Source: Magallana gigas (taxonomy: Eukaryota). From it: a DNA stretch of 64,000 bases. Position 1 is the first letter of the stretch, and the number at the start of each line of letters is the position of its first letter. Positions 7,401-8,944 of the stretch are shown here, one piece after another. The stretch is taken from contig NC_088855.1 of NCBI RefSeq assembly GCF_963853765.1, positions 23,994,001 through 24,058,000 on the forward strand. Reading direction: 5' to 3'. Made by a program: the position numbers and the translations under genes. A model generated the notes under the pieces. That model was not told where the DNA came from, searched no databases, and saw only the letters and a list, made by a program, of their open reading frames with translations.

Positions 7401-8944
7401 TTGGTGAATTACATGCTTGCATTGTTTTGATCTTTGGCATTTAATGTTTTGTCTGTATTTTTTCCATGTGCTATAGGAATTACTCATCGTCCTGTAGTCC
7501 CTCCAGAAGTTACAGTCGGAGCGTGTCTCGGAGTCGATCCCGGAGACGCGAGTCCCGCAGTCCCTCCATCCGACGTAGGAAAGGATCCCCCAGCCATCTG
7601 GACAAGCGGAGAATCACAAGGTGGGGAGGGGGTATATTGTGTGTCTATCAACTCATATTTCTATCAACCTTTGGCATAATGAGGATTTTAAAAACATTTG
7701 ACAGAAATGAGTATCAAAATAAAAGCCTTAAATACAAATGAAATGTAATGTATGAAAAAAAAAATTTTCTTATTATGCAGTGATTAAAATGAGTTGAAGA
7801 TAGAATTGTTCCAAAGGATAGTATAATTTAAAATCTATTTTCAAAAGTTTGGAACTAACAAATTTTGGTTGAAAACTAACTTGTCGCTTGCAAAATTTTC
7901 ACCATTAAATTACTTCAGTGCATGTATTCATCAATGATATGAATTACATTTGAACACAATAACACATGCCTGTGTGGTTGAATTTCTACATCTATGAAGC
8001 ATGGGACATGTTTAAAATGACTCTTTTACAGATTTACTGAACTAAACAAATATAAACGTACTTGTTTTTGTAAGAATATAGCAGTATTCAAGTTTAGGTG
8101 GTCATTGTCATTTTATAGTACTAGGGTAATTTTCTAACTCCAAACAAGATAAGGTTTGATGGACTCTAACAGCTAGGTGTTGTTATTATAGCATTGAATC
8201 ATGATTTTTTGAAGTATACACTCTCATAACTGCAGCGGTGTGTGCATACAAATTGAGTAACGCGCGTTAGCGCGTTATGAAAATTTGTATGCACACACCG
8301 CTGCAGTTATGAGAGTGTATACTTCAAAAAATCATGATTTAATGCTTATATTTACATTTTTTTTAACTTCTTGCCTTGTCTGCAAATGTGATTCATACCT
8401 TAAAATTCCTATCTTATCCTAAGGGTAAGTTAATATTAATGGAAGAGCCACAGTAACAGCCATAAGCGTGAACTTTGATTTTCGTTTGTGACGTTGCAGT
8501 TTACAGCGTTCAACGTTTGTGACGTCATAATAAAACTCGTCAATTTGACCTTTGACTACTTGTTGCATTTAGAGGCATTTAAACATCACCGAATTTAATG
8601 GAAAAACACAGTAGAATGTAAATATAATCAATTAATTAACTGAATGCATGCAATACTGCGCCAAAATTTTGATTTGTGACGTAAACAAAAGAAGTTTGAT
8701 GATGATTGTATGTATCAATAATGTGTCATATATTTCCTCATTTTACAGCGCTAGAAAACGCCCCGTTCCATACTATCGCCCCACACCGCCCAGTTCCAGC
8801 TCGGACAGCGATATGGATGACTGGTTCTACCACCACTACCGCCGCTCCAGGAGCCACTCCCGCCACCGAAAAAGGAGTAGAAGTAGCAGTATACTGCACT
8901 ACCGCCACCGCAGCAGAAGCATAGCTAGTGACAAAGGCAACTAA
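417..8944 (+). CDS. SRRM234: 3' part of RS-rich splicing factor Srrm2/3/4 (Srrm234), eMIC-containing isoform; 5' exons lie upstream of the window
   Basis: Exons 417-482, 6188-6346, 6871-7167, 7477-7620 and 8749-8944. All have AG/GT borders and all junctions are phase 2. Translation is Arg/Ser/Pro-rich (DDSRSPERKEKKKKSKKHKRD..., RSRSRSRSHSRSRRR...). It contains GSPSHLDKRRIT|SARKRPVPYYRPTP, matching the recalled SRRM3/4 eMIC motif (SPSHLEARRITSARKRPIPYYRPSP). Confidence 0.85.
1413..1445 (+). repeat. (GA)n microsatellite
   Basis: Direct reading: gagagagagag... with one interruption. Confidence 0.9.
1681..1803 (+). other. Candidate proximal alternative last exon of Srrm234 (stop almost immediately, then polyA signals)
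   Basis: Long pyrimidine-rich tract ending tttctcatacag at 1680. In phase 2 the exon gives CG|G TGA. AATAAA occurs at 1733-1738 and 1798-1803. Confidence 0.45.
3186..3347. mobile_element. TA-flanked MITE (Tc1/mariner-like, non-autonomous)
   Basis: Termini tacagtaaaacatggttata ... tataactgtgttttactgta are inverted repeats. Related copies occur at 28153-28558. Confidence 0.75.
5689..5810. mobile_element. Long palindromic hairpin of a non-autonomous element (Crypton-like)
   Basis: agtgcctgtttgggag...ctcccaaacaggcact arms around a central gacgcgaa. The family assignment is inference. Confidence 0.65.
8191..8345. mobile_element. Long palindromic hairpin of a non-autonomous element (Crypton-like) in the last Srrm234 intron
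   Basis: Arms gcattgaatcatgattttttgaagtatacactctcataactgcagcggtgtgtgcatacaaatt and its reverse complement; centre cgcgcgttagcgcg. Confidence 0.7.

What the first reader, a model, noticed from the sequence alone, without database searches (positions are those of the whole stretch)
7477..8944. eMIC (enhancer of microexons) domain in a molluscan Srrm2/3/4 gene, split across the last intron
Seen: exon 7477-7620 ends RKGSPSHLDKRRIT and exon 8749 begins SARKRPVPYYRPTPPSSSS, joined in phase 2. The six-frame track cannot show this because the motif is cut by a 1.1-kb intron. Established (recalled): SPSHLEARRITSARKRPIPYYRP is the core of the SRRM3/SRRM4 eMIC domain that drives neural microexon inclusion, and invertebrates carry a single Srrm234 gene. 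Inference: this animal has an intact eMIC-based neural microexon programme, and this locus is its master regulator.
Basis: partly seen in the sequence, partly recalled or inferred. Interest (0 to 1): 0.85.

Follow-up and report, generated by a model that had tools for sequence, protein, structure and literature searches.

The report
Oyster Srrm234 gene's eMIC domain
The two exons are real, are spliced together in RNA, and encode the C-terminal eMIC domain of the oyster's single Srrm234 splicing-factor gene, an expected orthologue of a domain already known across bilaterian animals; its neural role here is untested.

Summary
Exon 7477-7620 ends ...GSPSHLDKRRIT plus 'AG'. Exon 8749-8944 starts with 'C', completing a Ser codon, and continues ARKRPVPYYRP... 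to a TAA stop. The 1,128-nt GT..AG intron is spliced out in RNA contigs from two independent studies.

The joined peptide matches Pfam SRRM_C, the SRRM3/4 C-terminus, at 61.2 bits (E 1.5e-16). The separate halves score 33.1 and 12.8 bits and are colinear on the profile.

This is the only SRRM_C locus in the 564-Mb genome. An SRRM2-type N-terminus with a cwf21 domain lies 20 kb upstream on the same strand and is also single-copy. A 12-exon, all-phase-2 model gives an open 552-aa protein. The last six exons have RNA junctions. The first six are ab initio, two of them matched to human SRRM2.

So this is the 3' end of the oyster Srrm234 orthologue. That it drives a neural microexon programme rests on homology only; neither tissue specificity nor activity could be tested.

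One side result: two other invertebrate sequences carry an RS-rich, stop-bearing alternative exon in this same intron, as Drosophila does. The oyster intron shows none, and the eMIC-joined form is the main assembled isoform.

This is an ordinary member of a known kind.

The parts
417..482 (+). Exon E of the gene model (…RDDSRSPERKEKKKKSKKHKRD…), phase 2 in and out
   Evidence: Ab initio: AG/GT sites and an open frame within the 12-exon chain. No RNA evidence was laid here.
2915..2968 (+). Exon F (54 nt, …SHSNKHSRSTNKRRRHH…)
   Evidence: Ab initio.
4684..4764 (+). Exon G (81 nt)
   Evidence: RNA joint 4764|6188, GT..AG, in X1 and X3 contigs and one X21 read. Frame checked.
6188..6346 (+). Exon H (159 nt)
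   Evidence: RNA joints 4764|6188 and 6346|6723.
6723..6785 (+). Exon I (63 nt). A G>C variant at 6784 (Gly/Arg) is seen in both RNA runs.
   Evidence: RNA joints 6346|6723 and 6785|6871, the latter reported as 6783|6870 with one letter C between.
6871..7167 (+). Exon J (297 nt), a Pro/Ser/Arg-rich region ending in an RS run. Reading through its donor gives AGG TGA, an immediate stop.
   Evidence: RNA joints 6785|6871 and 7167|7477. The second is also in 4 raw reads of X24.
7477..7620 (+). Exon K: first half of the eMIC domain (…RSPSIRRRKGSPSHLDKRRIT + AG)
   Evidence: Pfam SRRM_C 33.1 bits, profile positions 12-55. RNA joints on both sides. Against a diverged oyster contig, L019, there are 6 nucleotide differences but only 1 amino-acid difference.
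7621..8748 (+). Last coding intron (1,128 nt, GT..AG, phase 2), which splits the eMIC core. No RS-rich alternative exon was found in it.
   Evidence: Low-depth RNA contigs cover 7800-8200 and 7860-8183|8623-8776.
8093..8622 (.). Polymorphic repeat insertion inside the intron, with a 65-nt inverted repeat at 8190-8254 / 8282-8346. It is high-copy and expressed elsewhere.
   Evidence: Absent from L018, L019 and X3 contig 10. Inverted repeat. Depth of 600-1300.
8749..8944 (+). Exon L coding part: second half of the eMIC ((S)ARKRPVPYYRP…) plus an RS/His/Tyr-rich tail and the TAA stop
   Evidence: Pfam SRRM_C profile positions 57-67. Joined scan. 196/196 nt identical in L018, while its flanks are 85-96% identical.
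8945..10298 (+). 3' UTR, at least 1.35 kb. The end was not determined because the laid stretch stopped at 10400.
   Evidence: RNA contigs cover 8747-9779 and 9823-10295. Stranded poly(A) reads of X21 cover 9031-10212 in the sense of the gene.

Best explanation
Window 7477-8944 (+) holds the last two coding exons of the oyster's single Srrm234 gene, the orthologue of vertebrate SRRM2/3/4. Spliced at 7620|8749, they encode the C-terminal eMIC (SRRM_C) domain. The gene starts about 20 kb upstream, outside the window at C3:23981124, with an SRRM2-type N-terminus and cwf21 domain. It runs through 12 exons, all separated by phase-2 introns, to give a protein of about 552 aa rich in Ser/Arg/Lys. Shown here: the domain match, the splicing, the single-copy status and the colinear N-terminal blocks. 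Inferred from published work on flies, amphioxus and vertebrates: the eMIC is an Arg/Ser-type domain that contacts U2AF1/2 and SF1 and promotes early spliceosome assembly on very short neuronal exons. On that basis this protein isoform would enhance microexon inclusion where it is expressed. How expression of the eMIC isoform is restricted in the oyster is not resolved.
For: The sequence and frames are as described. Pfam SRRM_C scores 33.1 bits (cut-off 27) for exon K and 12.8 bits for exon L, colinear on the profile. The joined core scores 61.2 bits, E 1.5e-16. Only one SRRM_C locus exists in the genome. RNA joints 7167|7477 and 7620|8749 are GT..AG in contigs from two studies, and one 1009-nt contig spans exons G to L. 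The N-terminal exon matches human SRRM2 residues 1-81 at E 1.5e-29 and exon C matches residues 119-174 at E 7e-12; both lie on the same strand, in order, and are single-copy. The 12-exon chain is open with consistent phases. Exon K shows 5 synonymous changes against 1 replacement, and exon L is invariant, versus diverged oyster contigs. The same intron position after RRIT occurs in two other animals (L017, L020). The mechanism and the pan-bilaterian distribution come from PMC8797185.
Against: No single transcript linking exons A-F to G-L was seen; exons A-F are ab initio. The 7620|8749 junction appeared in assembled contigs only, not in the raw reads of X21 and X24, where depth was 0-1. Tissue of origin is unknown, so neural enrichment is unshown. 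That Pfam SRRM_C equals the published eMIC rests on my knowledge, not on a paper I could read; the 2019 paper is not held.
Confidence: 0.87

Rival explanations
1. The eMIC exons belong to a separate, shorter transcription unit that starts at an internal promoter downstream of the cwf21 exons. That would be an SRRM3/4-like gene, not the C-terminus of a full Srrm234 protein.
For: RNA linkage was shown only for exons G-L. An X3 contig runs unspliced from 4500 across the exon G acceptor, at depth 19 against 27.6 for the spliced form.
Against: The frame upstream of exon G has a stop at 4661-4663, and there is no in-frame ATG between exon G and the eMIC, so an internal start gives no eMIC protein. 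Exons A-F chain to G with matching phase-2 junctions and an open frame. Published invertebrate Srrm234 genes carry both domains (PMC8797185).
Confidence: 0.06
2. The oyster eMIC isoform is the default, broadly expressed product rather than a neuron-restricted alternative isoform. Oysters would then lack the fly-type alternative or poison exon switch, or would restrict eMIC activity by other means.
For: No RS-rich or otherwise convincing alternative exon lies in intron 7621-8748. Two other invertebrate sequences do have one at this position: the 142-nt stop-bearing insert in L017 and the intronic RS exon at L020 1702-1851, and so does Drosophila. The K|L junction sits in the highest-depth contigs of two bulk, metatranscriptome-type runs: 22 and 43, against 2-6 for intron-containing contigs.
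Against: Tissue of the runs is unknown. Contig depth is a poor measure of isoform ratio. Weak contigs retaining intron J|K (an immediate stop) and part of intron K|L do exist, and parts of the intron are held in many RNA runs. A non-eMIC 3' end could lie outside the 5.9 kb that was laid.
Confidence: 0.2
3. The match is a chance resemblance of low-complexity Arg/Ser-rich sequence, or a decayed pseudo-exon pair.
For: The region is RS-rich, and exon L alone scores below the Pfam cut-off.
Against: The joined peptide has E 1.5e-16 over the non-repetitive core. It is a unique locus in 564 Mb. The exons are spliced in RNA, the frame is open to a stop, and changes versus related oysters are synonymous-biased or absent.
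Confidence: 0.01

Closest known systems
Human SRRM4 (nSR100) and SRRM3, C-terminal eMIC domain (Pfam PF15230 SRRM_C)
   Same: The conserved core …SPSHL..RRITSARKRP.PYYRP… sits at the extreme C-terminus after an RS-rich stretch, with a profile match of 61.2 bits. The nearest ESM-Atlas clusters are SRRM4 fragments carrying PF15230, which is a lead only.
   Different: In vertebrates the eMIC sits in two dedicated, neurally transcribed paralogues. Here it is the C-terminus of the single gene that also carries the SRRM2-type cwf21 N-terminus. The tail after the core (DSDMDDWFYHHY…) is not conserved with vertebrates.
Drosophila Srrm234 (CG7971), eMIC-encoding isoforms C/F (PMC8797185)
   Same: It is a single gene with cwf21 at the N-terminus and the eMIC at the C-terminus. 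The eMIC is split by an intron that follows the first eMIC-encoding exon.
   Different: In the fly that intron holds a proximal non-eMIC exon, used as a terminal or a poison exon under Elav/Fne control. No such exon was found in the oyster intron. Neural restriction is shown in flies and untested here.
Human SRRM2 (spliceosome component, PDB 5mqf chain S)
   Same: The N-terminal 80 residues (MYNGIGL…MEEQG) and the block at residues 119-174 are conserved.
   Different: SRRM2 is 2,752 aa with giant RS exons and no eMIC. The oyster model is about 552 aa and ends in an eMIC.
Unidentified invertebrate Srrm234 sequences L017 (Logan SRR13891816 transcript-like contig) and L020 (ENA ERZ27250121 genomic contig)
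   Same: The eMIC halves and the intron position are the same: RRIT + AG | N + ARKRPVPYYRP.
   Different: Both carry an RS/Tyr-rich, stop-containing alternative exon between the two eMIC halves. The oyster does not.

Membership tests
eMIC / SRRM_C domain (PF15230) | Significant profile match over the conserved core SPSHL..RRITSARKRP.PYYRP | tested here: met
   The joined 61-aa core scores 61.2 bits against a cut-off of 27, E 1.5e-16, on profile positions 20-67. The halves are colinear at profile positions 12-55 and 57-67.
eMIC / SRRM_C domain (PF15230) | Lies at the C-terminal end of an Arg/Ser-rich protein | tested here: met
   The stop comes 64 codons after the junction. RS runs lie in exons J and K just upstream.
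eMIC / SRRM_C domain (PF15230) | The two halves are joined in mature RNA | tested here: met
   The joint 7620|8749 is GT..AG in contigs of X1 (depth 22, 144 letters on the shorter side) and X3 (depth 43). It was not seen in the raw reads of X21 and X24, where depth is 0-1.
Invertebrate Srrm234 | The same gene carries the SRRM2-type N-terminus and cwf21 domain | tested here: inconclusive
   The cwf21 exon lies 20 kb upstream on the same strand. A second SRRM2-N block lies between the two. The 12-exon chain is open. However, no transcript was seen that links exons A-F to G-L.
Invertebrate Srrm234 | Single copy in the genome | tested here: met
   There is one SRRM_C locus and one strong SRRM2-N locus. 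The other cwf21-like hits are weak or repeats. The tool states that its counts are lower bounds.
Invertebrate Srrm234 | eMIC isoform restricted to neurons by alternative 3' processing | tested here: inconclusive
   No alternative exon was found in the intron. Only low-depth intron-containing contigs were seen.
eMIC function | Necessary and sufficient for microexon inclusion; binds U2AF1/2 and SF1 | not testable with these tools
   Known for vertebrate, fly and amphioxus proteins (PMC8797185; bioRxiv 10.1101/2024.09.17.613571). It needs a cell or in vitro assay.

The most novel reading that the evidence does not exclude
Oysters may have lost, or never had, the alternative or poison exon that sits inside the eMIC-splitting intron of flies and of at least two other invertebrates. 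The eMIC form of Srrm234 would then be the default product in many tissues, so microexon enhancement in this lineage would be either not neuron-restricted or restricted by a different mechanism.
Probability: 0.15. Interest if true: 0.5.

Novelty: new member of a known kind. Interest (0 to 1): 0.22.

Why it matters
The result confirms that a bivalve keeps the ancestral bilaterian arrangement: one Srrm234 gene with cwf21 at one end and the eMIC at the other, with the eMIC split by a phase-2 intron at the position where flies place their regulatory alternative exon. This is what published work predicts, so it adds an annotated, RNA-supported gene model rather than a new principle. The one point worth following is that the oyster intron shows no alternative exon and the eMIC-joined mRNA is the main assembled form. 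Tissue-resolved junction counts would show how, or whether, a mollusc restricts eMIC expression to neurons.

Tried and rejected
- **Exon L against 1.84 billion representatives.** Only ORF-call fragments came back: P0001 from a related oyster, P0003 from another species, and a spurious repeat protein, P0002. No full-length orthologue was recovered.
- **Word-indexed protein searches.** The first was swamped by RS-rich candidates and gave one hit, P0004. The second gave three genomic read-through ORF calls (P0005-P0007). Neither gave spliced isoforms.
- **PDB searches.** Exon K found nothing, so no eMIC structure is solved. Exons D and E found nothing, being short and low in complexity.
- **Torres-Mendez 2019 paper.** It is not held, and no paper in the library combines eMIC, microexon and mollusc, so I could not verify whether molluscs were explicitly covered. 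One literature search was badly framed and returned only oyster papers.
- **Alternative exon in the oyster intron.** A scan for an RS-rich or pyrimidine-tract-preceded alternative exon found only trivial 2-6-codon tails.
- **Raw reads of X21 and X24.** No read crossed 7620|8749 at depth 0-1. The tool warns that dips in depth are not findings.
- **Second run search with intron letters.** It shows that parts of the intron (0.22-0.44 of the words) occur in many RNA runs, but cannot say which part or in what form.
- **L017's 142-nt insert.** It can be read two ways. As a cassette exon, the join gives the canonical …RRITSARKRP…. As a retained GT..AG intron shifted by 6 nt, it gives …RRITRSRKRP…. 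The homologous intronic exon in L020, which has a genomic acceptor, favours the cassette reading, but this is not settled.
- **Tandem repeats.** TRF found no tandem repeat in the 3' end of the CDS or the UTR, although blastn shows diverged ~70-nt self-matches.
- **Tool availability.** The look-up of sequencing runs was busy three times before it answered.

Full report
**1. The observation**

Reading window 7300-9200 shows an acceptor AG at 7475-7476. An exon then runs from 7477 to 7620 and ends AAG|GTGGGG. In the frame starting at 7478 it translates to a 47-residue peptide ending …RSPSIRRRKGSPSHLDKRRIT, with two bases 'AG' left over.

The next acceptor, …CATTTTACAG|C, puts the exon start at 8749. 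AG+C gives Ser, and the frame then reads ARKRPVPYYRPTPPSSSSDSD… for 64 codons to a TAA stop at 8942-8944. The intron is 1,128 nt, GT..AG, phase 2.

**2. Is it an eMIC/SRRM_C domain?**

Scanned apart, exon K hits Pfam PF15230 (SRRM_C, 'Serine/arginine repetitive matrix protein C-terminus') at 33.1 bits, above the cut-off of 27, on profile positions 12-55. Exon L hits the same profile at positions 57-67 with 12.8 bits. Position 56 is the split Ser codon, so the two halves are colinear.

A 61-residue string spanning the junction scores 61.2 bits, E 1.5e-16, on profile positions 20-67 in one stretch. A six-frame scan of the whole 564-Mb genome with this profile found only these two exons. The ESM-Atlas feature search placed exon K nearest to SRRM4-fragment clusters carrying PF15230; this is a lead only.

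That PF15230 corresponds to the published eMIC domain is my own knowledge. The 2019 paper that defines the domain is not held.

**3. Is the junction used?**

One read-laying run over window 4500-10400 with four runs from four studies gave the following GT..AG joints, after the tool's stated cut shifts.

| Joint | Support |
|---|---|
| 4764\|6188 | X1 and X3 contigs, one X21 read |
| 6346\|6723 | X1 and X3 contigs, one X21 read |
| 6785\|6871 | X1 and X3 contigs, with a G>C variant at 6784 |
| 7167\|7477 | X1 and X3 contigs, plus 4 raw reads of X24 |
| 7620\|8749 | X1 contig (depth 22) and X3 contig (depth 43) |

- In X1 a single 1009-nt contig carries all five joints and runs into the terminal exon.
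- The raw-read runs X21 and X24 have depth 0-1 over exons K and L, and no read crossed 7620|8749. The tool warns that such dips are not findings.
- The genome holds a single split locus, so there is no retrocopy. The joined form therefore cannot come from DNA.
- Contigs and stranded poly(A) reads continue without further joints to at least 10298. Exon L is thus the terminal exon, with a 3' UTR of at least 1.35 kb.
- The run labels include 'oyster metagenome', so the animal is an oyster.

**4. The gene**

- A cwf21 profile hit lies at C3:23981292-23981366 (+), 20 kb upstream of the eMIC.
- The ORF there begins [25 protein letters not shown]…. It matches human SRRM2 residues 1-81 at E 1.5e-29 and has no second good copy in the genome.
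- Between that exon and the window start, an exon matches SRRM2 residues 119-174 at E 7e-12.
- A small exon supplying the second half of cwf21 was found by pattern (…YSAEDIEKKVTMFREML…).

Chaining these with AG/GT sites gives twelve exons, A to L. Window coordinates for E to L are 417-482, 2915-2968, 4684-4764, 6188-6346, 6723-6785, 6871-7167, 7477-7620 and 8749-8944. Exons A-D lie upstream, at C3:23981124-23993650.

All eleven introns are phase 2 and every internal exon is a multiple of three in length. The chain is open for 552 codons, with 18% Ser, 15% Arg and 11% Lys.

Exons G-L are RNA-supported. Exons A-F are ab initio, with A and C anchored by homology. No transcript linking the two parts was seen, so 'one gene' is a strong inference rather than a demonstration.

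**5. Constraint**

A diverged oyster contig, L019 (91% identical overall), differs from exon K at 6 nucleotides but only 1 residue. Another contig, L018, is identical over all 196 nt of exon L, while its intron parts are 85-90% identical and its UTR about 95%.

Both contigs, and an X3 contig, lack window 8093/8184-8622. That segment is therefore a polymorphic repeat insertion in the intron. It carries a 65-nt inverted repeat and is covered at very high depth.

**6. Relatives elsewhere, and the regulatory intron**

- **L017 (found through P0003).** This is a transcript-like Logan contig of another species, with an uninterrupted 271-codon RS-rich ORF ending …RGSPSHLDRRRIT. A 142-nt segment follows, encoding RSRSSSYNRYYHH…SYR and a stop. 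Out of frame after that comes …ARKRPVPYYRPSPPS…. Removing the 142 nt restores an eMIC that aligns with the oyster's.
- **L020 (found through P0004).** This is a 7.4-kb genomic contig of a third animal. The first eMIC exon ends ATCACCAG|GT and the second begins CCAG|T GCA CGC AAG…, 3.9 kb later. That is the same position and phase as in the oyster. About 800 nt into that intron sits an exon with an acceptor …GCGTTAG|ATCC…. It encodes an RS/Tyr-rich tail and a stop, and it begins with the same ATCC as L017's insert.

This is the topology described for Drosophila Srrm234. There, a proximal non-eMIC exon follows the first eMIC-encoding exon. It acts as an alternative terminal exon or as a poison exon, and eMIC translation requires skipping it (PMC8797185).

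In the oyster intron I found no such exon. There is no RS-rich open stretch, and the few pyrimidine-preceded AGs give 2-6-codon tails. The traces of non-eMIC forms are these:

- Low-depth contigs retain intron 7168-7476, which puts a TGA directly after exon J. Their depth is 2.6-3.3, against 22-43 for the spliced form.
- Low-depth contigs cover 7800-8200, or 7860-8183 joined to 8623-8776 (depth 5-6).
- Between 0.22 and 0.44 of the intron's sampled words occur in many RNA runs.

Whether these are pre-mRNA or real isoforms could not be resolved.

**7. How it most likely works**

- **Shown here.** The oyster expresses an mRNA whose last two exons join to encode an SRRM_C/eMIC domain at the end of an RS-rich protein. 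The same single-copy locus encodes the SRRM2-type N-terminus.
[quoted passage not shown] It contacts U2AF1/2 and SF1, favours early spliceosome (A complex) assembly on microexons that often have UGC motifs near the 3' splice site, and arose in the bilaterian ancestor as an alternative isoform of Srrm234. By homology the oyster protein should do the same.
- **Not shown.** Neural restriction, target exons and activity are all untested.

**8. Comparison and novelty**

The locus passes the sequence, position, splicing and copy-number tests for membership of eMIC/Srrm234. Linkage to cwf21 on one transcript and neural-specific processing remain open. Activity is untestable with these tools.

The existence of the eMIC across Bilateria, in a single non-vertebrate Srrm234 gene, is published, so this is a new, well-supported member of a known kind and not a surprise.

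The only mildly unexpected point is that no alternative exon is apparent in the eMIC-splitting intron and the eMIC-joined form dominates the assembled RNA. This leaves open, at perhaps 15-20%, that oysters do not restrict the eMIC in the way flies do.

**9. Verdict**

- Observation: confirmed.
- Interpretation: domain and gene identity are supported; 'master regulator of an intact neural microexon programme' is plausible by homology but untested.
- Interest: low (0.22).

No earlier findings of the scan touched this place.

Noticed in passing
window 56708-59256 (-): Two ORFs on the minus strand carry a BTB_2/T1 tetramerisation domain (85.9 bits) and Ion_trans plus Ion_trans_2 (107.9 and 55.4 bits). 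Together they look like a voltage-gated K+ channel gene of the Shaker superfamily.
   Followed up: partly
window 5091-6120 and 8046-8636: Two high-copy, highly expressed repeat segments lie inside Srrm234 introns, with contig depth up to about 7,000. Both are absent from a diverged oyster contig (L019), so they are polymorphic insertions. The second has a 65-nt, 98% complementary inverted repeat at 8190-8254 / 8282-8346.
   Followed up: partly
gene model, C3:23981124 to window 8944: All eleven introns of the 12-exon model are phase 2, and all ten internal exons are multiples of three in length (111, 174, 75, 66, 54, 81, 159, 63, 297, 144). Any internal exon could therefore be skipped in frame.
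   Followed up: no
window 4500-4711: RNA contigs of X3 (depth 19) and X1 (depth 4) run unspliced from the intron across the exon G acceptor at 4683|4684, beside the spliced form (depths 27.6 and 22). Stranded X21 reads also cover 4500-4696 in the sense of the gene. This could be a retained intron, an internal start or pre-mRNA; it is unexplained.
   Followed up: no
L017:717-865 and L020:1702-1851: Two other invertebrate Srrm234 sequences carry an RS/Tyr-rich, stop-containing alternative exon inside the intron that splits the eMIC. This mirrors the Drosophila proximal or poison exon. In L017 the exon is included in a transcript that also has the distal eMIC exon.
   Followed up: partly
window 6784: A G>C difference is present in the RNA contigs of both X1 and X3. 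It changes the split codon at the exon I/J junction from GGA (Gly) to CGA (Arg).
   Followed up: no
window 8885-9150: The 3' end of the coding sequence and the start of the 3' UTR contain diverged direct repeats of about 65-70 nt, seen as secondary blastn matches of L018. X3 has a 9-nt insertion at 9034. TRF did not report an array.
   Followed up: partly
G000:C8:22775782-22775895 (-), L004: A second cwf21-profile hit scores 34.7 bits on profile positions 10-44, in an exon reading …KYQDEIESGKRSRK…VEHYRKKLLQKV, without an SRRM2-type N-terminus. Four identical 22.6-bit hits elsewhere look like a repeat family.
   Followed up: no
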